NCBI RefSeq assembly: GCF_001194135.2
Contig: NC_068987.1
Coordinates: 37,274,912-37,335,598, forward strand
Length of the DNA stretch: 60,687 bases
Direction: 5' to 3'
DNA from: Octopus bimaculoides
Lineage: Eukaryota
Shown: positions 15,172 to 58,640 of the stretch, piece by piece
Layout: each line of letters opens with the position of its first letter
Position numbering within the stretch: the stretch's first letter is position 1
Notes under the pieces: generated by a model
Database searches by the model: none
What the model was told of the DNA's origin: nothing
What the model saw: the letters and a program-made list of their open reading frames with translations, nothing else
Program-made: the position numbers and the translations under genes

Positions 15172-18100
15172 TTTGCACAGCTTCTAACGCTGGAGATGTA
15201 CTACAGTGTCAGCTGTTCACTGCCAGTGAATTAAAGTAACACCTCTTATTTTTCGAGCACCTTCCACAGTATTCGAGCGGTTTCAAGCAGTGCTGTTTTC
15301 TGCAAGTGTTCCACCCTTATTGCAGCTCCTTTTTGTTCCACATACTTCTCGAGATCTTTGCTCACTGTTCCCAGGGCTCCGACAATTATTGGTACTACTG
15401 CTACCTTTTTCATCGACCACAACTGCTTAACTTTCGAAGCTAACTTGTGATATCTCCCGACTTTTCTTTCTTCCTTATCGCATACCTTGTTGTCAGCTGG
15501 GCATACTATATCTATGATCCAGCATAGTTTGTTTTCTTTCTCAATTAAGACTATGCCCGGCTTCCTATTTTATATCTCATGGTCGCACTGAATCATAAAA
15601 TCTCATAGGATCTTTGCATTTCTATTTTCGACGATGCCTTCAGGTTTGTAGTCGTACCATTTTTTGCTCTGTCAAGTCCATACTTGTTGCAAAGCGTCCA
15701 ATGGACAAGCCTTGCTATATTGTCGTGGCGTCTCTTATATTCCTTCTGGGCTAGTGACGTACATTGGCTGGTAATATGCCATATGGTTTCACCGTTTTGT
15801 CCACAAATTCTGCACTTATTACTTTCTGCTGTGTTGTCTAATCTGTATTTTATGTAGTTTATTCTTAGTGCTTGTTCTTGGGCAGCACAGACTAGCGCCT
15901 CCGTTTCTGGTTTTAAATCACTTTTAGTCATCCACAGCCATCTTTTTCTCTGTCTGTCTTATCTTCAACATCCCTATGAAATTGACTATGCATTCTTTCC
16001 TTTACCCACCTATTTTCAGTTTTTTTCGTTTTCAATTTCTTGTATAGTGCTTTATCTTTGCAATCTTTCATCCTACACAAGCCTGACCTTCTTACTTCTA
16101 ATAATAGCGGTTCTGTGGCATTTTTTACATACCATGCTATGTTGTTTTCTTCTCCTCTAATGCTATGTTCGTATCCAATAAGTCCTCTTCCCCCTCTTTT
16201 TCTTGGTACATACAGTCTGTCTGTGTCACTTTTTGGGTGGAGTGACCCATATCTAGTTAGCGACTTCCTTGTCTTTCTGTCTAAGCTGTTTAGTTCGTCT
16301 ACTGTCCATGTGATTACCCCTGCTCCATATCTAAGGAGTGAAACCGCCCAGATGTTGATAGCTTCGATCTTATTCCGTCCGCTTAATTTTGACTTAAGGA
16401 TCAGTCTCAGTCTGTGCAAGTACTCCGCCTTAAATTTTTCTGTCATTTCTTTCTCCATCAATTTATCCATTTCCAAAATCTGATATCAGCACTGAAGGTA
16501 TACACCGTATCANNNNNNNNNNNNNNNNNNNNNNNNNNNNNNNNNNNNNNNNNNNNNNNNNNNNNNNNNNNNNNNNNNNNNNNNNNNNNNNNNNNNNNNN
16601 NNNNNNNNNNNNNNNNNNNNNNNNNNNNNNNNNNNNNNNNNNNNNNNNNNNNNNNNNNNNNNNNNNNNNNNNNNNNNNNNNNNNNNNNNNNNNNNNNNNN
16701 NNNNNNTTGAGGTCATCCATGAATAACAAATGGTTGACTTTTTGTTGGCAGCTTTTGAATACATACCCAGCCATTGCTTTCCTCAGAATCAGTGTTAGTG
16801 GTATCAAACACAGTACAAAGATTAGTGGGGACAGGCAGTCCCTTTGGAAGATGCCCCTCCTAATTTCTACTGTACCTAAACTTCTTCCGTATGCTGTCAG
16901 GTCCGTCCACCAATTCGCCATACGTTTTACTTTTTCCAAGCAATCGCTCAACATTCGATGCAATACCAAATAGGTTCATACACTCCATAATCCAAGAATG
17001 TGGGATCATATCATACGCCTTATGATAGTCGATCTATGATATGGCTAAGTTACTTTTCCTCCTCTTGCAGTTTCTAAGTACAGTTTTGTCTATCAGAAAT
17101 TCATCCTTGGTACCTTTGCACTTACGATTGCAACCTTTCTGCTCATGTGGCAGGACTCCATTTTTTCCAGATGTTCGTACATTGACTCTGCGAGTATTCC
17201 AGTCAATAATTTCCACATAAGTGGCAAGCAGGATATCGGCCTATAATTGTCTACCGTATTACCTTTCTCGATGTTTTTCAAGCACAACACTGTCCTACGC
17301 ATTGTCAACTACTCTGGTGTTACTTGATCGGCATTTAACAAGGTGCTGAGTTGCGCAGCTATTCATGCATGACATTCACCAAATCTTTTGATTCAGTAGT
17401 CTTGAACTCCATCTGGTCCCGCGGCCTTCCAGTTGCTCATTTTTTTTGCCGATTTCCTTCACTTCCCTAACTGAAATGACTAGTTCTGCCTGTTTTGGAC
17501 AGACTACTGTTTGTTTCAGTTCCTGCAACCATTCAGCATCCTTCTTATTTCTTTATTTCCCACAAGGGGCTAAACATAGAGGGGACAAACAAGGACAGAC
17601 AAAGGGATTAAGTCGATTACATCGACCACAGTGCATAACTGGTACTTAATTTATCGACCCCGAAAGGATGAAAGGCAAAGTCGACCTCGGCGGAATTTGA
17701 ACTCAGAACGTAACGGCAGACGAAATACTGCTAAGCATTTCGCCCGGCATGCTAACGTTTCTTGCTCTCCTTGTCTTTATCCAGATGTCACTCCAAAACC
17801 TTTGACTTTCATTGTTATCTGGTATCAACTTTTCATCTGTACACTCTCCATTTATTTCTTTATAGAATCTCTTCTGATCTACTCTGAATAACCTATTCTG
17901 GTGGTAACCCTTCATTCTTTGGTCGTATCTTACCATCTTTGCCTTCTTCACAACGAGGCGCTGTTTCAGTTCCTCCACTACTACTTTCAGGCCCTTTCTT
18001 TCAATATTATACTTCCTTTTCAGCGCCCTGTATTTTTGTTCGCTTTTAAGCTCCCCTTTTTCTTTTCAGTCTAACACAGAGATTTCCTACGCGATCATGT

Positions 18101-22269: not shown

Positions 22270-23227
22270 ACACATATATGTATATATATATTGTTTTATT
22301 CTTCGACGTATTTCAGACATAAGGCTGTGACCATGCTGGAGCACAGTCAGTGAAGAAGTATGGAATGTTTCACCAATTTGTGTAACATTGTTGCGCAGGG
22401 GCCATTCTAATCTTCACTGCATCATTCCAGTTTTTGTACATGTACTGCCGAAGCAGTATATAGTTATCCTATTTAAGCTTATGTCTCTTCAAAAATGGAG
22501 TTATCTCAATCGCCTTGTTGACACTCTTTTGATGCAAACCGAATGAAAGAAGTATGTTCTTTGTTTATATATAGCATGCAGTTATATATTTGAATACTGA
22601 TGCATACAAAATTATAGTCAAGGGACGCAAGCTGATATATAGAGGTATAATAGAAATGTAATGTTAGTATTATGCATATGTTAAAGCAATGGGCATATAT
22701 ACGCAAATATGCTCCACTGATTTCTTTTCGGCTTAAGTTCTACAAAACTTTCCTATATATAATTTTCTATAAATATACTTCAAATGGTGTAGATTCCAAT
22801 TATATCCGAAATATGTTGGAAAAACAAAATGTATTTGGAGGGCGTGTGGAGTGGAGATTCAGAAAATTCACACGGGTCGACTTAGTTTCCTCACAACTTC
22901 CGGGAAAGAAGTTATTTTTATAGATTTCGACAAATATTTTTTAAGAGTGTATAGATTACGATTATTTTAGAAACTGATACGCAAATAAAATTTGGTGAGA
23001 TAGCAAACATACATACAGATGCTCGTTGCATTCCCCCACCCCCCAAAAATTATAATCAAAACAAATTCCAATATAATCCGAATCTACACCATATCTAAAC
23101 AATCTGAAGCGCATTTGTAGAAAATTTCATTGAAAAATATTCATTTTTCTGAAAGTTATGAAGAAAGAAGTTCATTTTTCTGGAAGTTATGAAGAAAGAA
23201 ACGTATTCCGAAGGACGTAATCCAGTG

Positions 23228-31735: not shown

Positions 31736-33600
31736 CTAGCTGAATCGCTGCCCTCCGTGCGGTCGATTCAGCTAATACATATCTAATCTCCTGATCGTAG
31801 TTTGAAAGTAAAAAGTGAAACTTACTATAATTTCCTTTCATACCCTTATACCCTGAGTCCAAAGCCAATATATGCTCATTGTTCTCAGAACCAACACTGC
31901 TGTTGGCAACATAGAACTGAACATGGCTGATATGTGTTGGCAGATAAATTCCAACTTTTTTGGATTTCTTTGATGTCATTCCAAAAGCCGGCTTTACAGG
32001 AAACTACTTCCTGGAAAATGAGAACAGATAGTCTTCAGTGGTGGTCAGTGGAATTCTTGGTGTCATTATTCGGATTCCAGCATGGGTCCCATTGGCTACT
32101 TCTGCTTCAATAAGGTGATTGTACAGATTCAAGAATATATATCTTGTTCCGTTGCAATGACCTGATAGATCAAGGTTTCTGAGCAGCATAATGGAAGAGT
32201 ACTTCTTCAAAACCAAAATGTATGGTGGAAACCCTGATGGATTGAGATCATTGATCAGTTCCAGCAGGAACTCAGTCTCGTTTTCGTGTAAAGTGACACA
32301 ACTTATAGAAGTTTCGACATGAAATACTGTATTCACTTCTTCAGCAGCCTTGTTTGTAGGAGTAATGATGGCTCTGCTACTCATCCATAGTTCCTCTCTA
32401 TATTTCTTACCAATACCCCTGAAGGCCATTTCACAATGGTCCGTAGCCTTGTAGAGGCAATCAAATGCAGTGGAGGAATAAATATTTCGTATTCACCAAT
32501 TTCTTGATTGATAAGAAATGTTCCATTCCCAGCTGGTCAAGATAGGATGAGAAAGCAGTGTCATCACCGCCAGAATTTTGGACTGCCATATTGACAGACA
32601 AATTCAGGCTTTAGGCATGGTTTCAAATATAAGACTGTTTTAATGTGACATGAACAGTCTGGGCCCTGGAACCTCTTTGCACCACGACCAATATCTGCTT
32701 CCAGTCTCCAGAAGACAAAATATTCAGACTGCCAAACAGCTTAGCTGATTCTTGTCTAACTTCTCTGAGACAGCGATCAACGCATTCATAGACACGCCTA
32801 TGGCTCATCGTAATCTTGTCAATAACCAGTAGCCTTGCCTTTTGGAAAAGTTTTCCACTGGAATCAATTACTTTCATGTGGTATACAGATTCCTCTATCA
32901 GGGCATGTTCTGTTAAAAATGTTTTCACAGTAGTGCAACACAAGGCTTGGGTTTCGTTCTTTCTCATGAAAATCTTCCACTTCAACTTCCATAACCATTC
33001 TCTCAGTGTCAGTTCTTTGCTGACGAAGTCTTGATTGGTATCATCCCTGGCTGTTTGCTTGTAGCTGCTGAATTTGTGGCAGCGATGTGTTTTCCCTAGA
33101 GTTCTGTTTCCTCAGTCGATCGGTATTCCTCCGTGCTTCTGTTTCATGTGGTGTTTTCATTGCACGGCTTTTCTGTGTTCTCAACCGATTCGCATTCCGC
33201 CATACTTCTGTTTTTTTTTCTGTTTTTTCTATTGCACGGGTTTCTTATGTTCTGATCTGATTCGCATTCGTCTGTGCTTCTGAACCTTCTGGTCTTTCCA
33301 TTGCACGGGTTTCTCGTCTCTTCAGCCGATCTGCATTTCTCTGTGTCCCTGTTTCTTCTGGTGTTTTCATTGCACGGGTTTCTTGCATTTTTCGCTTTAT
33401 TTCGAGACACTGAGAAGAGCTAGGTCCTTGTCTGTTTTCTTCAGTTAGCATCTGTTGACTTTGCTCAGCGATCTTTGGTGAACGAGAATTTTTTAGGGAC
33501 AGGTTGTTGCCCTTTCTTTTTCTGGGCATAGCGTACTATTGAAAGCGTGAATATTTATGATAATTATAAAGTAGAAGTCTTGAGACTATTCACCTAATAT
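31736..33600 (-). mobile_element. Internally deleted Helitron (N-terminal repeats fused to a PIF1 helicase remnant)
   Basis: MPRKRK...repeated ETRAM units; LVIDKITMSHRR...GDWKQIL; ITPTNKAAEEVN; PSGFPP...IMLLRNLD...CNGTR; FPVKPAF.MT...SHVQFYVA. Terminal CTAG at 31736-31739. 5' end uncertain (gap). Confidence 0.88.
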
Positions 33601-37909: not shown

Positions 37910-38331
37910 TATATATATANNNNNNNNNNNNNNNNNNNNNNNNNNNNNNNNNNNNNNNNNNNNNNNNNNNNNNNNNNNNNNNNNNNNNNNNNNNNNNNNN
38001 NNNNNNNNNNNNNNNNNNNNNNNNNNNNNNNNNNNNNNNNNNNNNNNNNNNNNNNNNNNNNNNNNNNNNNNNNNNNNNNNNNNNNNNNNNNNNNNNNNNN
38101 NNNNNNNNNNNNNNNNNNNNNNNNNNNNNNNNNNNNNNNNNNNNNNNNNNNNNNNNNNNNNNNNNNNNNNNNNNNNNNNNNNNNNNNNNNNNNNNNNNNN
38201 NNNNNNNNNNNNNNNNNNNNNNNNNNNNNNNNNNNNNNNNNNNNNNNNNNNNNNNNNNNNNNNNNNNNNNNNNNNNNNNNNNNNNNNNNNNNNNNNNNNN
38301 NNNTATATATATATATATATATATATATATC

Positions 38332-38708
38332 GTGGCACTCCGTCGTTTACGACGACGAGGGTTCCAGTTGATCCAATCAAGGGAACAGCCTGCTCGTGAA
38401 ATTAGCGTGCAAGTGGCTGAGCACTCCACAGACACGTGTACACTTAACGTAGTTCTCGGGGAGATTCAACGTGACACAGAGCGTGACAAGGCTGGCCCTT
38501 TGAAATACAGGTATTGCAGAAACAGGAAGAAAGAGTGAGAGAAAGCTGTGGTGAAAGAATACAGCCGGATTCACCACCTCACGCCAGAGCTTCGTGGAGC
38601 TTTAGGTGTTTTCGCTCAATAAACACTCACAGCACCCGGTCTGGGAATCGAAACCGCGATCCTACGACCACGAGTCTGCTGCCCTAACCACTGGGCCATT
38701 GCGCTTCC
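38332..38708 (-). mobile_element. tRNA-derived SINE family C, full length
   Basis: Head GCGCAATGGCCCAGTGGTTAGGGCAGCAGACTCG...GGTTTCGATTCCCAG with A and B boxes; tail ...CGACGGAGTGCCAC. Confidence 0.92.
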
Positions 38709-38723
38709 ACACGTGTGTGTGTG

Positions 38724-38767
<44 letters not shown>

Positions 38768-39041
38768 TGTATGTATATATGTGTATGTAAGTATACACAG
38801 ACACAGGCACACAGACACATATATATATAGTGTACAGAAAATATATGTAGTTATTTATTCATGTGTGTAAATATTACAATGAATGCAGTAATGTACGATG
38901 GTAGCTGGATATTTATGATGGTATGTAGGTATCTGAGTAGCTGGCTGTGAAGGTTGGAAACAACTAAGTGGGTAGGAATGCGTATCATTTATAAGAATGC
39001 ATATATGTGTCTATGTATATATATATATATGTGTGTTTGTG

Positions 39042-39077
<36 letters not shown>

Positions 39078-39826
39078 TGTGCAAACATACATACGCACAT
39101 GCACACACACATACGCACGCACACACAAACACACACACACACAGTCACACACACACAAACACACATGCAGACTCTTACAAACAAAGAAAAGATAAAGAGT
39201 CAGATAAAGCAACGTGGATGACATTACTCAAGCGGGCGTATTGACTGTTATTCAAAGGTAAAAATGTTGTCATACAAGGGGGACTGAGCTTCGATTTCAA
39301 TCTCCATTTGTAGACATGCCTTCTGTTCTATCACTAAAGAATTTGGGTGGGAGTCACTCGTTTTCTCAGCCTTAAAGAATTCTTCTCGCCTCGTTCTGAC
39401 TGTATGGTAAGGAGTCTGCTTTCCAACCACATAGTTCCGGGTACAGTCCTGCTGCATAGCACCTTGGGCAAGTGACTTCTGCTATAGGTCCGGGTTGATC
39501 AAAATGTTTACGTCAATAATTTGTCTTACCAAAGGCATGGAGGCTCCACTTCCCATTTTTTGTCTGTTAATATCAGATCTTTATAAAGATACCAGTAACT
39601 TATTTGATATGTGTCTGGGAGAAATTTTTGGATTATAGCTATTTTTTTATTGCTTAGTTAGGTGTAGATTACTGTCCATGAGCCTTTACCGGGATTTCGA
39701 AACGATTAGGAAGGATAGGTAACGTATCCGCAACAGCTGGATTGTTTGTAACAGAGGGAACTCTTCGAAGGGTACCTAATGACCAGATACTGGTGTCAAA
39801 CTGGAAGTCATTATCTAGCAGCCAAG

Positions 39827-40040
39827 GAGGGCGGTGAGCTGGCAGAATCGTTAGTACTCCGGGCAAAATGCTTAACGGCATTTCGTCCGTTTTTACATTC
39901 TGAATTCAAATACCACCGAGGTCGACTTTGCTTTCATCGTTTTGGGCTCGATAAATTAAGTACCAGTGAAACACTGGGGTCGATGTAATCGACTAGTCCA
40001 CTCGCCCAAGATTTCAGGCCTTGCGCCTTTAGTAGAAACG
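39827..40040 (+). mobile_element. SINE family A with a 17-bp target-site duplication
   Basis: ATTATCTAGCAGCCAAG (39810-39826) and ATTATCTAGCAACCAAG (40041-40057) flank the element. Confidence 0.93.
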
Positions 40041-40850
40041 ATTATCTAGCAACCAAGTGGGTCATGACGAAATTTGAATTCAGTACACAAAGAGCTGGAA
40101 CAAATACTGTCAAGCATCTAGTCCGATGTTTCAGCCAGTCCACCACTTTAGATTAGTACTTTATTTGCCGACCTCTAAAGTGTGACATTGTGAGTGCAAA
40201 CACATACTTAACAACTAATGTACAAATCTAGACAAGGTTTGCAATCGAAGAAACTATCGTATAATTTCATTACAAAATTAAATAATATACACTTGAGAAT
40301 AGTGAGTATTTCCTTACGCAGTCAAAATATCATTTGAGTGTTGATTACTCTTATGGATGCACACATGCTTCGTAAAGAATGTCAATGTCTGCGCACAAGC
40401 AAATTTCCAAGTGCACCCACAGAAAAAAAAAATGAGAAGGAACATGGGCCAGAAAAATGTTAGAAAAAAAGACCCCGGCGGTATTAAATTCGGTGGGATA
40501 TAAATGCATTAACGAATGTTTACATTACTAGAGCTGCTTTTAATTTACCTTCAAATGTGCTACGCCGCGGAACAACAGCGAATAGTTTTCACTCTATTTG
40601 TATATAAGTTATAGACCAGAGATTCGATTCGTTTCGGTTTGATCCGAATGGGTGATATTGATAATCCACATTAATAGTGAAATATCGGTATCTATCACTC
40701 TCCTCTGGTGTATGATATTCAGATGTTCTTTAACACTCAGTGTAGTGTGGGGACCTATCCTAGACGCTATCTCACAGCAAATTCGGGGTATAAACAAAAC
40801 ACATACACTGTATGAGCAATCGATAATGATTATTCACACACGCGCACATA

Positions 40851-40944
<94 letters not shown>

Positions 40945-41173
40945 TATATAGTCCGGGAACAGTCTAGACTGTTGATTAACAGCTCAGTCAAGATGGTATT
41001 TTCTTCATCTCTTACTCTTGTATTTGCACACATCTACAAAATGAACTTCCATTATGTAGCTGAGGAGTACATTTTCATTGCACATCTTATGTGGTGTTCT
41101 CACAACATAAATAAACGAAGTTTGTACGAAACGTACGTACTGCTATAACCTAATGCATTTTTGTTGCTTTCTT

Positions 41174-41223
<50 letters not shown>

Positions 41224-41378
41224 TACATATAATAGGGATAACTACTAAGTGGACATCCATTATGCTAGAAGTAAATCACCAATGTTCTGACCACTAAAGA
41301 TTGTTCTCAAGACGATTCAGCAAGCACCAGAACGTAAGCGAGCAAGGACAAATGAAAATATACAAAATATAAAGAATT

Positions 41379-41445
41379 AATCGTAGACCGGTTTCGCTAT
41401 CGACAAAATTACTTACGTAATAGTCCGTAGCTCATCAGTACGATC
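41379..41445 (-). ncRNA. Type I hammerhead ribozyme, intact core
   Basis: GAUCGUA CUGAUGA GCUA[CGGACU AUUAC GUAA GUAAU UUUGUCGA]UAGC GAAAC CG GUC UACGAUU: 7-bp helix I, palindromic ACCGGU helix III, GUC cleavage triplet. Confidence 0.9.
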
Positions 41446-41980
41446 GTTCTTTTCAATATAATATGTAGAACTATACAGGAGACGTCCGCATAAAATCAGA
41501 CATGTATATAGTTCTACCAATTACATTGGGGTTATATTTCAAATGTCTTTGTTTTAGCGCGCCAAATACCGGAAATAATTCTACAGAAAATAATTCACTG
41601 CAGTGAATATTGACGGTTAGAGAACATATTTACTTAAAATTTAAATAATAAGAGTAACAAATTGAATATTAATTTGATTAATATCAATTTAAAACCAGTG
41701 GCCTAGCATATTGAAAAAATCTTAAGATTCAGAAAAATTATATTACATACATATAATAGGGCTAACCACTAAGTGGACATCCATTTTGCTAGAAGTAGAT
41801 CACTTACAATCTGACCCATTCACTACAGTGAATTATCTTCTGCAGGATTATTTCCGGTATTTGGAGCGCTAAAATGAAGACATTTGAAATATAACCTCAC
41901 TGTAATTGGTAGAACTATATACATGTCTGATTTTATGTGGACGTCTCGTGTATAGTCCTACATATTATATTGAAAAGAAC

Positions 41981-42047
41981 GATTGTACTGATGAGCTACG
42001 GACTATTGCGTAAATAATTTTGTTGATAGCGAAACAGGTCTACGATT
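41981..42047 (+). ncRNA. Type I hammerhead ribozyme, intact core
   Basis: GAUUGUA CUGAUGA(41988-41994) GCUA...UAGC GAAAC AG GUC UACGAUU. Predicted cleavage after C42040. Confidence 0.87.
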
Positions 42048-42319
42048 AATTCTTTATATTTTGCCTATTTTTATTTGTCTTGCTCGCTTACGTTCTTGTG
42101 CTTGCTGGATTGTCTTGAGAACAATCTTTAGTGGTCAGATCGTAGGTGATCTACTTCTAGCATAATGGATGTCCACTTGGTAGTTATCCCTCTTATATGT
42201 ATATAATATAATTTTTCTGAATCTTCAGATTTTTTCAATATGCTAGGCCACTGGTTTTAAATTGATATTAATCGAATTAATATTCAATTTGTTATCCTTA
42301 TTATTTAAATTTATATATA

Positions 42320-42714
42320 GGCGCAGGAGTGGCTGTGTGGTAAGTAGCTTGCTTACCAACCACATGGTTCCGGGTTCAGTCCCACTGCGTGGCATCTTGG
42401 GCAAGTGTCTTCTGCTATAGCCTCGGGCCGACCAAAGCCTTGTGAGTGGATTTGGTAGACGGAAACTGAAAGAAGCCTGTCGTATATATGTATATATGCG
42501 TGTGTGTGTATTTGTGTGCCTGTGTTTGTCCCCCCAACATCGCTTGACAACCGATGGTGGTGTGTTTACGTCCCCGCAAGCTAGTGGTTCGGCAAAATAG
42601 ACCGCTAGAATATGTACTAGGCTTACAAAGAATAAGTCCTGGGGTCGATTTGCTCGACTAAAAGGTGGTGATCCAGCATGGCGGCAGTCAAATGACTGAA
42701 ACAAGTAAAAGAGT
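42320..42714 (+). mobile_element. tRNA-derived SINE family B, full length
   Basis: Head GGCGCAGGAGTGGCTGTGTGGTAAG...GGGTTCAGTCCC, internal (TA)/(TG) tract, tail GACTGAAACAAGTAAAAGAG. Confidence 0.93.
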
Positions 42715-42794
42715 ATATATATATATATATATATATACCGTTTATATATTTGTTTTGCAAGGTTTTTGATGTGAAATCGTGTGTTGAAACAGAT

Positions 42795-42946
42795 GTTGTA
42801 CTTGGGGGTTGGTCATATTGCCAGTTCAGCCAATAATACTTAACGTTAATGTAATATAAAGTAATATAAAGCTGAAGCAAATTAACACCAAATATACAGT
42901 GCATGTGTTTTTATTGGCTAAACTGGCAATATGACCATCCCCAAAT

Positions 42947-42951
<5 letters not shown>
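42795..42951. repeat. Short MITE-like inverted repeat (~41-bp arms)
   Basis: GTTGTACTTGGGGGTTGGTCATATTGCCAGTTCAGCCAATAA versus TTATTGGCTAAACTGGCAATATGACCATCCCCAAATACAAC. Confidence 0.85.
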
Positions 42952-42977
<26 letters not shown>

Positions 42978-43038
42978 GTGTGCCGAGTGAAATTTATGTT
43001 TTTGTGATTATGTGTATGCTGTAGTCTGCGATTTTTTC

Positions 43039-44040
43039 ATGGACCGGACAAAGAGCCAACGTGAAATTTTCCGTTAAACTTGTGAAGTCTGCTACAGAGA
43101 CATTGAGCATGCTTACGCAAGCGACGAGGCAATGAGTCATTCGCAATGTTTCGAGTGACACGGGCGCTTCAAAAGCGGAAGAACGTCCCTGGATGATGAT
43201 GAATGATCTGGAAGACCAGCCACGAGCATCACACCCTGAAATGTGGAGAAAATTCATCAACTTGTGCATGAGGATCGTCGTAGGACAATCAACGATTTGC
43301 TGATATTATTGATCTGTCGTGTGCAATCCTAACGTATGAATTGAACACGTGGCGTGTCTTTGCCAAGTTTATCCCCCACCTGCTAACCACTGAGTAGAAA
43401 AACATCGCATCGAAGTCTGTTAAGCTCTCCGTCAGCGTTGATGACCCATTCTTCATGTCGAGAATCATCAAAGGTGACGAGTGTTGGATCTACAGGTACG
43501 ATCCTGAGACGAAGCAGCAGTCGTTACAATGGAAAGGGCCTTCATCTTCACGACTGAAGAAGGCACAGCTGAGCCGCAGCTCGATCAAGAGCAAGCTGAT
43601 CGTTGTTTTCGACATCTGCGGTATTGTGCATCAAAAATTCCTCCTCCAGCACCAGACCGTCAATCGAGAGTTCTACTGCGACGTTTTGAAGCGTTTCAAG
43701 GAGGACATTCGGCGATTGTAACCGGATCTGTGGAGTGCGAAGAACTGGATTCTTCACGACGACAATGTACCCTGTGACCGAACTCTCATCACTCGTAAGT
43801 TTCTCGTCAAAAAACAACATGGTCTCACTTCCGCACTCGTCCTATTCGCCAGATTTAACTCCCGCGGGCTTCCATCTCTTCCTCAAGAGGAAAATGCAGT
43901 TCAAAGGTCGCCGTTGTAACATCGTTGTCGAGCTCTACAGCGAATCGCAGAAGGTCCTCGACCCGCCTACGGCAAACGACTTCAAGGCCGGAAGAGAAAA
44001 AATAGGTAATGGGTGTGTATGCATATTTCAGGAGTTATTC
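43039..44040 (+). mobile_element. Decayed mariner (DD34D-type) transposase
   Basis: RANVKF...SATETL; GDECWIYRYDPETKQQSLQWK; WILHDDN; HSSYSPDLTPAGFHLF. Frameshifted; TIRs not seen. Confidence 0.92.
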
Positions 44041-44146
44041 TTCCATCTTTTGCATTACACTCAATCCATTAACTAGCCCCGAACATAATGCTTAAATACA
44101 AACTAAGTTTAACCCTGTAACACTATTAGCGTTCTGATAGTGTGTG

Positions 44147-44181
<35 letters not shown>

Positions 44182-44429
44182 NNNNNNNNNNNNNNNNNNN
44201 NNNNNNNNNNNNNNNNNNNNNNNNNNNNNNNNNNNNNNNNNNNNNNNNNNNNNNNNNNNNNNNNNNNNNNNNNNNNNNNNNNNNNNNNNNNNNNNNNNNN
44301 NNNNNNNNNNNNNNNNNNNNNNNNNNNNNNNNNNNNNNNNNNNNNNNNNNNNNNCACCATGAGAGATCGTTAACCACTACACACATCTTTTTTCTCTCCT
44401 TGTTTCTCTTCTTGTTTCTTTCTGTGTTC

Positions 44430-44998: not shown

Positions 44999-46108
44999 GT
45001 AGTTGACATTTGTCATATCGAAATAACTATCGTTTAAATATTAAAATGTAACATTCAAGCAAGAACAGGAACTGTAAGGAGTGAACGTGGCGGAATGTCG
45101 CAGTCCAAGTTCTCGACATCAGGGTTATAGTTATATAGGTCCCAGGAGACCAATAGCTCCAACCCTAATGGTACTGATCTAATAGTAGCGGGTCTCTATC
45201 CGTTTCGATTATGAGTGTGAAATTGTTCGATCAGTTGAATTACCTGTTCATTGAATTAGCGTATATATGACCGAATATTCCACAGAAACGGCTACCCTTT
45301 ACGTAAATTCTAAAACAGATTCAGCGTGACATAAGAAGAACCTTTGAATTACAAGTATAATTCATTTGAAGGGATTCCATACTATTTTCGTTTGCCCGGC
45401 TTCACCTACAAAGCTTTGGTGACTCGAAGCTATCGTAAAAGGCACACCCAAGATGACACACAAAGGCATCAAACCTGGTACCTCGCAACTGTTGACAAAG
45501 ATTAATCATTCAACTATACTAACATTGTGATTTAGTTTCACTGGCTACTCTATTAATCAGCTAACTGAGGAATCTACCATTCTAACTAACTGTAAGATTC
45601 TATATACAAGAGTTATTAAAATTAAGTAAAGACATTATACATGTGAGTTGTCTCTTTAAGTTTCAAGCTGAAATTCTGTCAGGTTCAACTTCTTTTTTCA
45701 ACATGCTGATATCTATTTAAATATATATATATGTCATAATATATTCGTATTCTCTTTAACTGCTGTCTTTTTAGATTATCTGTGACTGATGAAGAGTGAC
45801 TCGTGGAAAAGAACGGAGTTGAGGGAGTAAGCGGCGAGCTTTTATAGTATTATATTTTCTTTCGACCGTCGCAGTTGAGTTAAAATTCCATGTTGGTCGA
45901 CTTTCTCTTTCACTAATGATCGAATATTTAAGAGTAAAATACACTGAACTGTTTTATTTCTATACATATTTTCCCTTNNNNNNNNNNNNNNNNNNNNNNN
46001 NNNNNNNNNNNNNNNNNNNNNNNNNNNNNNNNNNNNNNNNNNNNNNNNNNNNNNNNNNNNNNNNNNNNNNNNNNNNNNNNNNNNNNNNNNNNNNNNNNNN
46101 NNNNNNNN

Positions 46109-57492: not shown

Positions 57493-58640
57493 TTAGGTCG
57501 TCAAGTAGGAAATTTGTAGAGAAGGAAAAAATTTGCTAATGTTTTATAAATACAAAGAATAGTTTTATTCCTCAAAGTATGCACCCATATTGTCTATACA
57601 CTTTTGCCATTTCAGCTGTAGCTTGTCCAGCCTGGAACTGTAAAAGCTTGCCAATCTAGAGTCAATAAAATATTGGAAGGCCTGCTTTATAGCATCATCG
57701 GAATTAAATTCTTTTGCTATCAAAAAGTTTTCCAAATTCTGGAAGAAGTGGTTGTCAGTGGGGGCAAGATCAGGTGAGTATGGTGGATGATGGAGAACTT
57801 CCAACTCCAATTCCTGCTGTGTCGCCAGTGTCATTTTTGCGATGTGTGGTCTGGCGTTGTCTTGCAATAAATTAGAAATTAGGAGTGGATCTGTTGACTA
57901 ATCTAGGCTGTTTTCTTTTTGTAAGTTTCTGGATCATTCGGTCCAGTTCGTTGCAGTATACTTTGGCCGTGATTGATGAGCCAGCTTTAATGAAATCATA
58001 ATGGATCACACCTGCACCAGACCACCAAATACACACCATCTGCTCCTGTTGATGAATTTCGCTTTTTGGACTGTATTTTGGTAGCTCGTCTTTGTCCAAC
58101 AATTGTGCTGAACGTTTACGGTTGTTGTATTGGATCCATTTCTCATCGCTTGTTACAATTCGATTAAAAAATTATTCATTTTTGTAACGAGAAAGTAGCA
58201 TAATGCAGGCTTCCAAACATTGCTGTTTCTGATTTTCATTGGAACCCACCTATCCAACTTTTTCACTTTACCAATTTGAACTAGGTGACTCAATATTGTT
58301 TCCTTGCTAACACCAAACAACAACGATAATTCACAGGCACTTTGATATGGATCTGACTCGACGGTGGTTTTCATTTCGCCATTATCAACTTTCGTTTCTG
58401 GTCGACCGCGTTGCTCATTTGTGAGGTCAAAGTTACCAGAAAGAAATTTTGAAAAACAATTTGATACTGTCTGCTGTGTAATAACATTAAAATGAAATAC
58501 TCCATTAATATTATGATTTGTCTGTGATGCTGTATTTCCAAGAAAGAACTCATATTTCAGAACTGTACGAATTTCCGACTTATCCATCTCTACACAAACA
58601 TAGCAAAAAACGATTTATAGGTTCTTTATAAAGCGCAAAA
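57493..58640 (-). mobile_element. Decayed mariner, cecropia/Hsmar1-like
   Basis: MDKSEIRTVLKYEF...GKVKKLDRWVP; WWSGAGVIHY; QDNARPH...HPPYSPDLAPTD; GAYFEE*. Terminus TTAGGTCGTC at ~57492. Confidence 0.92.

What the first reader, a model, noticed from the sequence alone, without database searches (positions are those of the whole stretch)
41221..42312. 524-nt hammerhead monomer stored as a permuted tandem plus an inverted copy: retrozyme/circRNA-like element
Seen: a 524-bp unit (41221-41744) restarts for ~73 bp (41745-41817). An inverted copy follows (41818-42312) that runs across the unit junction, so it is circularly permuted. The inverted arm begins at an internal 16-bp palindrome, ATTCACTGCAGTGAAT (41593-41608). 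Each arm carries one type I HHR with an intact CUGAUGA/GAAA/GUC core and a long helix II (capped by AUUAC-GUAA-GUAAU in the 41379 copy). Several differences between the arms are wobble-preserving (C-G to U-G in helices I and II), so this is not an assembly mirror. No ORF. Flanked by (TA)n. Established: PLE pseudo-LTRs carry HHRs, and animal non-LTR retrozymes are tandem HHR monomers that give circular RNAs (Cervera and de la Pena, from memory). Inference: both arms were copied from a multimeric or circular RNA by a PLE reverse transcriptase. This looks like a cephalopod retrozyme-type family that may be undescribed.
Basis: partly seen in the sequence, partly recalled or inferred. Interest (0 to 1): 0.88.

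Follow-up and report, generated by a model that had tools for sequence, protein, structure and literature searches.

The report
Decayed hammerhead retroelement copy in (TA)n
This is an old, non-coding, 524-nt repeat unit carrying a hammerhead ribozyme motif, inserted into a (TA)n microsatellite as two head-to-head copies, a layout typical of Penelope-like retroelement machinery, so it is an ordinary relic of a known kind of mobile element and not a new system.

Summary
A 524-nt unit (41221-41744) restarts for 72 nt. An inverted copy (41818-42312) then runs across the unit junction. Each arm carries one type I hammerhead motif with a complete core. There is no ORF, and (TA)n lies on both sides.

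The layout is a partial tandem plus an adjacent head-to-head inverted 5'-truncated copy in a (TA)n target, with 3' ends facing outward. This is the published insertion signature of Penelope-like elements (PLEs). It fits in vitro data showing that a PLE protein nicks and extends both DNA strands at AT-rich sites from unprocessed multi-copy RNA. The 524-nt periodicity with no coding remnant makes it a non-autonomous, non-LTR-retrozyme-like unit, not a truncated autonomous PLE.

Four limits apply:
- Rfam does not call the arm ribozymes.
- The "wobble-preserving" differences are ordinary transitions. The ribozyme diverged as fast as the rest of the unit (7%).
- Each arm has only one dimer-dependent ribozyme, so this locus cannot release a monomer or a circle.
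- No arm terminus coincides with the cleavage site.

Copy number, circular RNA, the PLE partner and the host lineage could not be tested.

A third, unrelated hammerhead relic lies just left of the (TA)n tract.

Verdict: new member of a known kind, of modest interest.

The parts
41221..41817 (-). Arm 1: 1.14 units of the 524-nt element (sense strand is minus). In sense coordinates (S = reverse complement of the unit) it is S452-524 followed by S1-524. Its 3' end is at 41221, against the left (TA)n. Its 5' end is at 41817.
   Evidence: Direct repeat with 524-nt spacing. The hammerhead strand defines the sense.
41818..42312 (+). Arm 2: 0.94 unit in inverted orientation (sense strand is plus), S137-524 followed by S1-108. 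Its 5' end at 41818 starts with the palindrome copy. Its 3' end is at 42312, against TA repeats.
   Evidence: blastn 92% and 96% to the unit, crossing the unit junction. Pairwise alignment shows 35 of 496 differences.
41379..41445 (-). Hammerhead motif of arm 1: type I, complete core, helix I 7 bp, extended 36-nt hairpin II with a GUAA cap, helix III as the 6-nt palindrome ACCGGU. Cleavage is predicted between 41386 and 41385.
   Evidence: Descriptor match with 0 of 200 simulations. Fold z = -2.4 to -2.55. Two copies cofold into a double hammerhead. Same design as axolotl Ax330. Not called by Rfam.
41981..42047 (+). Hammerhead motif of arm 2: same core, but decayed. Loop 3 is CAGG (palindrome lost), one helix II pair is broken, and three pairs are now G-U. 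Cleavage is predicted after C42040.
   Evidence: fold z -0.6 to +0.2. No Rfam hit.
41593..41608 (.). 16-nt perfect palindrome ATTCACTGCAGTGAAT inside the unit. Its copy (one mismatch) at 41818-41833 is the 5' terminus of arm 2.
   Evidence: It is predicted as a local hairpin in the monomer fold.
41178..41219 (.). Left (TA)n tract, the target microsatellite, abutting the 3' end of arm 1.
42313..42319 (.). Right TA repeat remnant abutting the 3' end of arm 2. The tract continues at 42714-42737, beyond a later SINE insertion.
41054..41146 (+). Third, unrelated hammerhead relic: CUGAGGA core, 61-nt hairpin II, 8-nt palindromic helix III ACGUACGU, A17. Its 3' side faces the same (TA)n tract. It is probably an older insertion of a different family.
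   Evidence: Descriptor match. Rfam Hammerhead_1 aligns over the full model at 17 bits, E = 0.18, below the gathering score of 34. No sequence similarity to the 524-nt unit.

Best explanation
The locus is one old retrotransposition product of a short (524-nt period), non-coding, hammerhead-bearing element. It was made by Penelope-like element (PLE) machinery acting in trans.

Proposed steps:
1. A transcript longer than one unit served as template. It was a linear multimer from a tandem source array or, less specifically, a circle.
2. The PLE endonuclease cut a (TA)n microsatellite.
3. Both DNA strands were used as primers for reverse transcription. Each started at an internal, TA-rich site of the RNA downstream of the ribozyme: S524 for arm 1, and S108 of the next repeat for arm 2.
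4. The two cDNAs grew towards each other. One stopped at S452. The other stopped at S137, just after copying a palindromic hairpin.
5. The two cDNAs were joined head-to-head at 41817/41818.

Since then both arms have decayed neutrally (7% apart), and a SINE has landed at the right edge.

At this locus the ribozyme has no function. Each arm has a single hammerhead whose 1-bp helix III with a palindromic loop needs a second copy in the same orientation to form the active double hammerhead.

Shown: the geometry, motif architecture, orientation, (TA)n flanks, absence of coding capacity, and equal decay of the ribozyme and the rest of the unit.

Inferred: the RNA intermediate, the identity of the reverse transcriptase, a single event, two-strand priming, and stalling at the hairpin.
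For: Geometry and permutation.

Orientation: the sense strands point outward, with 3' ends on the (TA)n flanks and 5' ends meeting at 41817/41818.

Published PLE features that match:
- Craig et al. 2021 (PMC8557442) describe PLE insertions as partial tandems, often with an inverted 5'-truncated copy adjacent at the 5' end, and a (TA)n insertion bias.
- Cervera and de la Pena 2014 (PMC4209133) report dual hammerheads 100-700 bp apart on opposite strands. They describe helix III of 1-2 bp with a palindromic loop that implies dimeric action.
- Frangieh et al. 2024 (PMC11167929) show that a purified PLE protein cleaves and extends both strands, prefers AT-rich DNA, starts reverse transcription internally downstream of the HHR, and uses unprocessed multi-copy RNA.

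Ribozyme motif:
- 0 of 200 simulated windows matched.
- The same descriptor recovers 3 of 4 validated retrozyme ribozymes.
- The double-hammerhead cofold forms.

Non-coding and non-autonomous.

RNA-like structure: the sense monomer has z = -4.6 and is 23 kcal/mol more stable than its complement.

Size: 524 nt is within the 51-972 bp reported for animal non-LTR retrozyme families.

Second relic: an independent hammerhead relic borders the same (TA)n tract, which marks the tract as a repeated target.
Against: - Only one locus was available. No other copy, source array or PLE with a matching pLTR could be retrieved.
- Rfam covariance models do not call the arm ribozymes.
- Cleavage was not tested.
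- No target-site duplication can be read inside a microsatellite.
- The offset between the two 3' ends is 108 nt, not the 30-40-bp 'tail' described for PLEs.
- No PLE ORF is present in the window, at least among ORFs of 110 aa or more and in the gap-free flanks.
- The 7% difference between arms could predate insertion (different monomers of a source array), or could reflect two separate events.
Confidence: 0.7

Rival explanations
1. A small piece of hammerhead-containing satellite DNA (524-bp tandem repeat) was rearranged at the DNA level. Replication template switching or break repair produced the inverted duplication, with no retrotransposition at this site.
For: Tandem periodicity. Type I hammerheads were first found in satellite DNA. 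No target-site duplication is readable. A microsatellite-rich, insertion-rich neighbourhood may be fragile.
Against: - Only 1.14 units are present.
- The symmetry centre is not at the palindrome, and no microhomology is visible at 41817/41818.
- Both outer ends fall exactly on TA repeats, with ribozyme sense strands pointing outward. The PLE model predicts this and random inversion does not.
Confidence: 0.1
2. Two independent insertions of the same family occurred. Arm 2 landed next to the 5' end of an existing arm 1, because the (TA)n tract is an insertion hot spot.
For: The tract has been hit repeatedly: a third hammerhead relic, a SINE and a MITE-like element. The arms differ by 7%. The two 3' ends lie at different unit positions.
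Against: No TA repeat separates the arms. The junction sequence (…TCTGACCC|ATTCACT…) is not the AT-rich kind of site that PLE endonucleases prefer. The three copies of the overlapping 72-nt segment are about equally distant from each other, as expected for one event.
Confidence: 0.12
3. A 5'-truncated remnant of an ordinary autonomous PLE (pLTR only), not a distinct non-autonomous family.
For: Hammerheads sit in pLTRs, and most genomic PLE hammerheads are isolated truncated copies. Retrozyme consensus sequences resemble pLTRs of PLEs.
Against: A truncated autonomous copy would run from the pLTR into ORF sequence. Here the sequence returns to itself after 524 nt, and no frame has a protein relative. 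No RT or GIY-YIG remnant lies in the flanks.
Confidence: 0.06
4. An assembly artefact, or chance motifs inside a foldback or TIR DNA element.
For: The window is a draft assembly with 10 N gaps. Craig et al. note that PLE tandem/inverted structures often cause problems in whole-genome shotgun assemblies, especially short-read ones.
Against: - The arms are 7% diverged and no N gap lies within 3 kb.
- The outer termini are not inverted repeats of each other: 41221 pairs with 42204, which is 108 nt inside the right end.
- The motif match is far beyond chance.
Confidence: 0.02

Closest known systems
Animal non-LTR retrozymes (Cervera and de la Pena 2020, PMC7229834; Li, Clavereau and Pollet 2026 preprint, 10.64898/2026.07.22.740005)
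   Same: - A non-coding, AT-rich repeat unit with one type I hammerhead per unit.
- Helix I of 6-7 bp, a basal helix II of 4 bp, and helix III reduced to a short palindrome. ACCGGU here compares with ACAUGU in axolotl Ax330.
- A strongly self-paired monomer.
- A unit length inside the reported 51-972 bp range, and dispersed sub-dimer 'offspring' copies are common.
   Different: - The locus holds no two ribozymes in the same orientation, so it is not itself a functional retrozyme.
- Hairpin II is 36 nt, not 13-14 nt, so the usual loop 1-loop 2 contact is doubtful.
- 524 nt exceeds the 150-450 bp range of the original description.
- Copy number and circular RNA are unknown.
- The head-to-head inverted pair is not part of the retrozyme description.
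Penelope-like element insertions with pseudo-LTRs and minimal hammerheads (Cervera and de la Pena 2014, PMC4209133; Craig et al. 2021, PMC8557442; Frangieh et al. 2024, PMC11167929)
   Same: - A partial tandem, with an inverted 5'-truncated copy adjacent at the 5' end.
- A (TA)n / AT-rich target.
- The hammerhead lies in the repeated part, with an enlarged helix II.
- Dual hammerheads sit on opposite strands a few hundred bp apart.
- 3' ends lie downstream of, and not at, the ribozyme cut.
   Different: - There is no RT/GIY-YIG ORF, and the period is only 524 nt.
- Helix III is present as a short palindrome, whereas it is absent in the min-HHR.
- There is no unpaired nucleotide between A9 and G10.1.
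- The offset of the two 3' ends is 108 nt, not a 30-40-bp tail.
Twin priming inversions of LINE-1
   Same: Two cDNAs are primed from the two strands of one target, which gives an inverted 5' segment joined to a sense 3' segment.
   Different: In L1 the two segments come from non-overlapping parts of one RNA. Here the arms overlap by almost a whole unit. That requires either a multimeric template or two template molecules.

Membership tests
Hammerhead ribozyme, type I | Conserved core C3-U-G-A-N-G-A9, G12-A-A14, A15.1-U16.1, H17 (not G) | tested here: met
   All positions are present in both arms and in the third motif. H17 is C in the arms and A in the third motif.
Hammerhead ribozyme, type I | Three helices around the core with helix I open, and a G10.1-C11.1 closing pair | tested here: met
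   Helix I is 7 bp and helix II is closed by G-C. 0 of 200 simulated windows give such a match.
Hammerhead ribozyme, type I | Score at or above the Rfam gathering threshold (RF00163 and clan CL00010) | tested here: not met
   No hit for the arms at gathering score or at E<=10. Arm 1 gets only RAGATH-1-hammerhead at 14.9 bits, E = 2.8. The third motif gets RF00163 at 17 bits against a gathering score of 34. The alignments show a 33-nt (arm 1) and a 53-nt (third motif) insertion in hairpin II where the models expect 6 nt.
Hammerhead ribozyme, type I | Compensatory base changes across copies | tested here: inconclusive
   Only two copies exist. They differ at 5 ribozyme positions: three give G-U through transitions and two break structure. 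The rate equals that of the whole arm.
Hammerhead ribozyme, type I | Self-cleavage at the predicted site | not testable with these tools
   This needs in vitro transcription of monomer and dimer constructs.
Animal non-LTR retrozyme | Head-to-tail tandem units, each with a type I hammerhead (at least two in one orientation) | tested here: not met
   Arm 1 is 1.14 units and arm 2 is 0.94 units. Each has one ribozyme, and they lie on opposite strands. The permutation implies only that the template was longer than one unit.
Animal non-LTR retrozyme | Non-coding, low GC, no LTR/PBS/PPT | tested here: met
   GC is 31%. The longest open stretch is 56 aa and there is no protein relative.
Animal non-LTR retrozyme | Unit size within the family range | tested here: met
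   524 nt lies within the reported 51-972 bp. It lies above the earlier 150-450 bp range.
Animal non-LTR retrozyme | Stable, highly self-paired monomer RNA | tested here: met
   The circular sense fold is -123.1 kcal/mol with z = -4.63 and 67% of bases paired.
Animal non-LTR retrozyme | Multi-copy family expressed as linear and circular RNA | not testable with these tools
   The host genome and transcriptome could not be reached.
PLE-type insertion | Partial tandem plus an inverted 5'-truncated copy adjacent at the 5' end | tested here: met
   compared with the description quoted.
PLE-type insertion | AT-rich or (TA)n target | tested here: met
   (TA)n lies on both sides. Published bias is quoted.
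PLE-type insertion | 30-40-bp 'tail' at one end | tested here: not met
   The two 3' ends are 108 nt apart in unit coordinates.
PLE (autonomous element) | ORF with a telomerase-like RT and a GIY-YIG endonuclease | tested here: not met
   None is found in the unit, in the flanks 38304-44181, or among the window ORFs of 110 aa or more that were scanned.

The most novel reading that the evidence does not exclude
The 524-nt unit represents a still undescribed, multi-copy retrozyme family of its host. Its hammerhead would carry an unusually long, interrupted helix II. Elsewhere in the genome the family would exist as same-orientation tandems that give about 524-nt linear and circular RNAs, mobilised by a (TA)n-targeting PLE. 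This locus would then be a natural footprint of two-strand target-primed reverse transcription on a periodic RNA.
Probability: 0.35. Interest if true: 0.4.

Novelty: new member of a known kind. Interest (0 to 1): 0.3.

Why it matters
If the family proves to be multi-copy and expressed, it would extend ribozyme-bearing non-LTR retrozymes to a lineage for which the searchable literature reports none. The hammerhead variant would have a hairpin II two to three times longer than in validated animal retrozymes.

The locus is also a clean genomic example of the layout expected from the two-strand priming seen in vitro for a PLE protein. Because the template is periodic, both cDNA start and stop points can be read in unit coordinates.

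As a single decayed copy, it changes nothing about how such elements are understood.

Tried and rejected
Searches for sibling copies. All failed, so copy number, tandem arrays and a PLE partner stay untested:
- blastn of the unit against the window found only the locus itself.
- Exact-pattern scans with a ribozyme pattern found nothing in the metagenome, GTDB genome or viral contigs. A 24-mer identical in both arms found nothing in the metagenome or GTDB contigs.
- A six-frame pseudo-protein of the unit against 5.8 billion proteins gave 0 hits.

Reaching the host genome through repeat-derived ORFs:
- LINE ORF relatives come from ENA metagenome assemblies, one of them a jellyfish metagenome. 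Their loci L001 and L002 contain neither the SINE nor the unit.
- The window's ORFs are not in the collection.
- The PIF1 ORF had no hit.
- A text search for the SINE sequence found nothing.
- The host lineage is therefore unverified.

Other points tried:
- Rfam at gathering score and at E<=10 gave no hammerhead for the arms.
- Foldback or TIR DNA transposon: rejected because the outer termini do not pair.
- Snap-back at the palindrome: rejected because the symmetry centre is not at the palindrome.
- Selection on the ribozyme since insertion: rejected.
- Homology between the third hammerhead fragment and the unit: none beyond the motif.

Full report
**1. Observation**

Repeat finding and blastn confirm the geometry.
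- A 524-nt unit U (41221-41744) restarts for 72 nt (41745-41816, 88% identity).
- From 41818 an inverted copy runs as rc(U388..U3) at 92%, followed without a break by rc(U524..U417) at 96%, and ends at 42312.
- The inverted arm therefore crosses the point where arm 1 ends. This is possible only if the copied template was longer than one unit or was circular.
- The 16-nt palindrome ATTCACTGCAGTGAAT lies at 41593-41608. Its one-mismatch copy forms the first bases of the inverted arm.
- No other copy is present in the window.
- The arms differ at 35 of 496 aligned positions: 24 transitions, 10 transversions and 1 indel.
- The nearest N gaps end at 38303 and begin at 44182. An assembly mirror is therefore excluded.

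**2. The ribozyme**

On the minus strand (41445-41379) the sequence reads GAUCGUA-CUGAUGA-GCUA…UAGC-GAAA-CCGG-U-C|UACGAUU.
- Every conserved hammerhead position is present, including G10.1-C11.1.
- Helix I is 7 bp and continues beyond a small internal loop.
- Hairpin II is 36 nt long: 4 bp, a 2x2 loop, 3 bp, a bulge, then 5 bp capped by GUAA.
- Helix III is only A-U around CCGG, so ACCGGU is a 6-nt palindrome.

The plus-strand copy (41981-42047) has the same core but is decayed. It has CAGG in place of CCGG, one broken helix II pair and three G-U pairs. Its fold is no better than shuffles.

Tests of the motif:
- A descriptor of my own found these two motifs plus a third one, and none in 200 Markov simulations of the whole window.
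- A relaxed version that requires a palindromic helix III gave 0.05 matches per simulated window.
- The same descriptor recovers three of four experimentally validated retrozyme ribozymes from the supplement of Cervera and de la Pena 2020.
- The closest of these in design is axolotl Ax330, whose helix III is ACAUGU. That paper reports it as weak alone and efficient as a dimer.
- Two copies of the arm 1 motif cofold into the classic double hammerhead, with an intermolecular ACCGGU helix.

Against a confident call:
- Rfam reports no hammerhead for the arms, at gathering score or at E<=10. The best is a 14.9-bit alignment to the RAGATH-1 model.
- Cleavage is untested.

**3. No selection signal**

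- The ribozyme carries 5 differences in about 70 nt. That is the same 7% as the whole arm.
- Three are C-to-U or A-to-G transitions, which always leave a G-U pair. Two of these lie at CpG sites.
- The other two destroy a pair and the helix III palindrome.
- This is neutral decay. It still shows the arms are not an assembly duplicate.

**4. Context**

- The composite sits in a (TA)n tract. (TA)21 lies on the left. On the right there is ATATATA, then a tRNA-headed SINE (42320-42713), then more (TA)n.
- The unit has no open stretch above 56 aa, and a six-frame query found no protein relative.
- The gap-free flanks hold no RT or GIY-YIG remnant, only a mariner transposase fragment.
- Elsewhere the window shows LINE, Helitron and mariner debris.
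- The monomer RNA is predicted to be strongly self-paired. The circular sense fold has z = -4.6 and is 23 kcal/mol more stable than the antisense.

**5. What it is**

Take the ribozyme strand as sense and S as the reverse complement of U.
- Arm 1 is S452-524 followed by S1-524, with its 3' end on the left flank.
- Arm 2 is S137-524 followed by S1-108, with its 3' end on the right flank.
- The 5' ends meet at 41817/41818.

This is the structure described for PLE insertions:
- Craig et al. 2021 describe partial tandems, often with an inverted 5'-truncated copy adjacent at the 5' end, and a bias for (TA)n.
- Cervera and de la Pena 2014 already noted dual hammerheads 100-700 bp apart on opposite strands.
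- Frangieh et al. 2024 showed that a purified PLE protein cleaves and extends both strands of AT-rich DNA. It starts reverse transcription internally, downstream of the ribozyme. It does not need ribozyme cleavage, and unprocessed multi-copy RNA is the main substrate.

Two-strand priming predicts exactly the outward-facing 3' ends seen here.

Consistent with that work, no arm terminus lies at the cleavage site (S359/360), and both arms read through it. A circular template is therefore allowed but not indicated.

The 524-nt periodicity without coding capacity separates this from a truncated autonomous PLE. It places it with the non-LTR retrozymes. A 2026 preprint argues these are non-autonomous PLE derivatives, with consensus lengths of 51-972 bp and many dispersed monomer offspring.

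**6. What it is not**

- It is not a releasable monomer. Each arm has one dimer-dependent ribozyme, and the two lie on opposite strands.
- It is not a TIR or foldback element. The outer termini do not pair.
- The 108-nt offset of the two 3' ends does not match the 30-40-bp PLE tail.

**7. Extra finding**

A third hammerhead motif lies at 41054-41146 (+), 30-50 nt left of the (TA)n tract.
- It has a CUGAGGA core, a 61-nt hairpin II, helix III ACGUACGU and A17.
- Rfam Hammerhead_1 aligns to it over the full model at 17 bits, E = 0.18.
- It shares no other sequence with the unit.
- The same microsatellite has therefore probably been hit by two different hammerhead-bearing elements, a SINE and a MITE-like element.

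**8. Limits**

- Every attempt to obtain other copies or to identify the host failed.
- Copy number, tandem source arrays, circular RNA, the PLE partner and the cephalopod attribution are therefore untested.
- The literature held here lists PLEs as abundant in octopus and other coleoids. It does not mention hammerheads or retrozymes in cephalopods.
- A rough age estimate is possible only if the host is an octopus and all arm differences arose after insertion. The calibration (a Jukes-Cantor distance of 0.065-0.09 corresponding to 18-25 million years) would then put the event at roughly ten million years ago.

**9. Verdict**

This is a decayed, dispersed copy of a non-coding hammerhead element, inserted by PLE-type machinery. 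It is a new member of a known kind, of modest interest.

Noticed in passing
window 41054-41146 (+): Third hammerhead motif of a different family. It has a CUGAGGA core, a 61-nt hairpin II, the palindromic helix III ACGUACGU and A17, and its 3' side faces the same (TA)n tract. Rfam Hammerhead_1 scores 17 bits, E = 0.18, over the full model.
   Followed up: partly
window 42320-42713 (+): A SINE of about 394 nt with a tRNA-like head (box A- and box B-like sequences) inserted into the (TA)n tract at the right edge of arm 2. ARAGORN does not call it a tRNA. A spurious 153-aa ORF runs from it into arm 2.
   Followed up: partly
window 42802-42945: A 35-nt inverted repeat (91% complementary, 74-nt spacer) lying between two (TA)n tracts (42714-42737 and 42955-42977). 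It looks like a small MITE inserted in the same microsatellite.
   Followed up: no
window 22354-22459 (-): U6 snRNA match: 72 bits, E = 2.8e-16, full length. This is the only Rfam hit at gathering score in the window. Whether it is a gene or a retropseudogene was not examined.
   Followed up: no
window 32004-32985 (-): Two adjacent ORF fragments with PIF1 helicase and Pif1 2B domains, probably a Helitron remnant. A search of the protein collection found no relative at E<=1e-15.
   Followed up: partly
window 15593-16969 (-); loci L001, L002: LINE-type reverse transcriptase fragments. The closest protein relatives (55-71% identity) come from ENA metagenome assemblies, including a contig labelled jellyfish metagenome. 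None comes from a named genome.
   Followed up: partly
window 43000-44100 (+) and 58153-58587 (-): Mariner-type transposase remnants: a Transposase_1 partial DDE domain and the HTH_48 domain of Mos1-like transposases.
   Followed up: no
window, 10 N runs (e.g. 37920-38303, 44182-44354, 45978-46108): The window is a gapped draft assembly (4074 N in total). Many gaps are bordered by microsatellites, so repeat structures next to gaps should be read with care.
   Followed up: no
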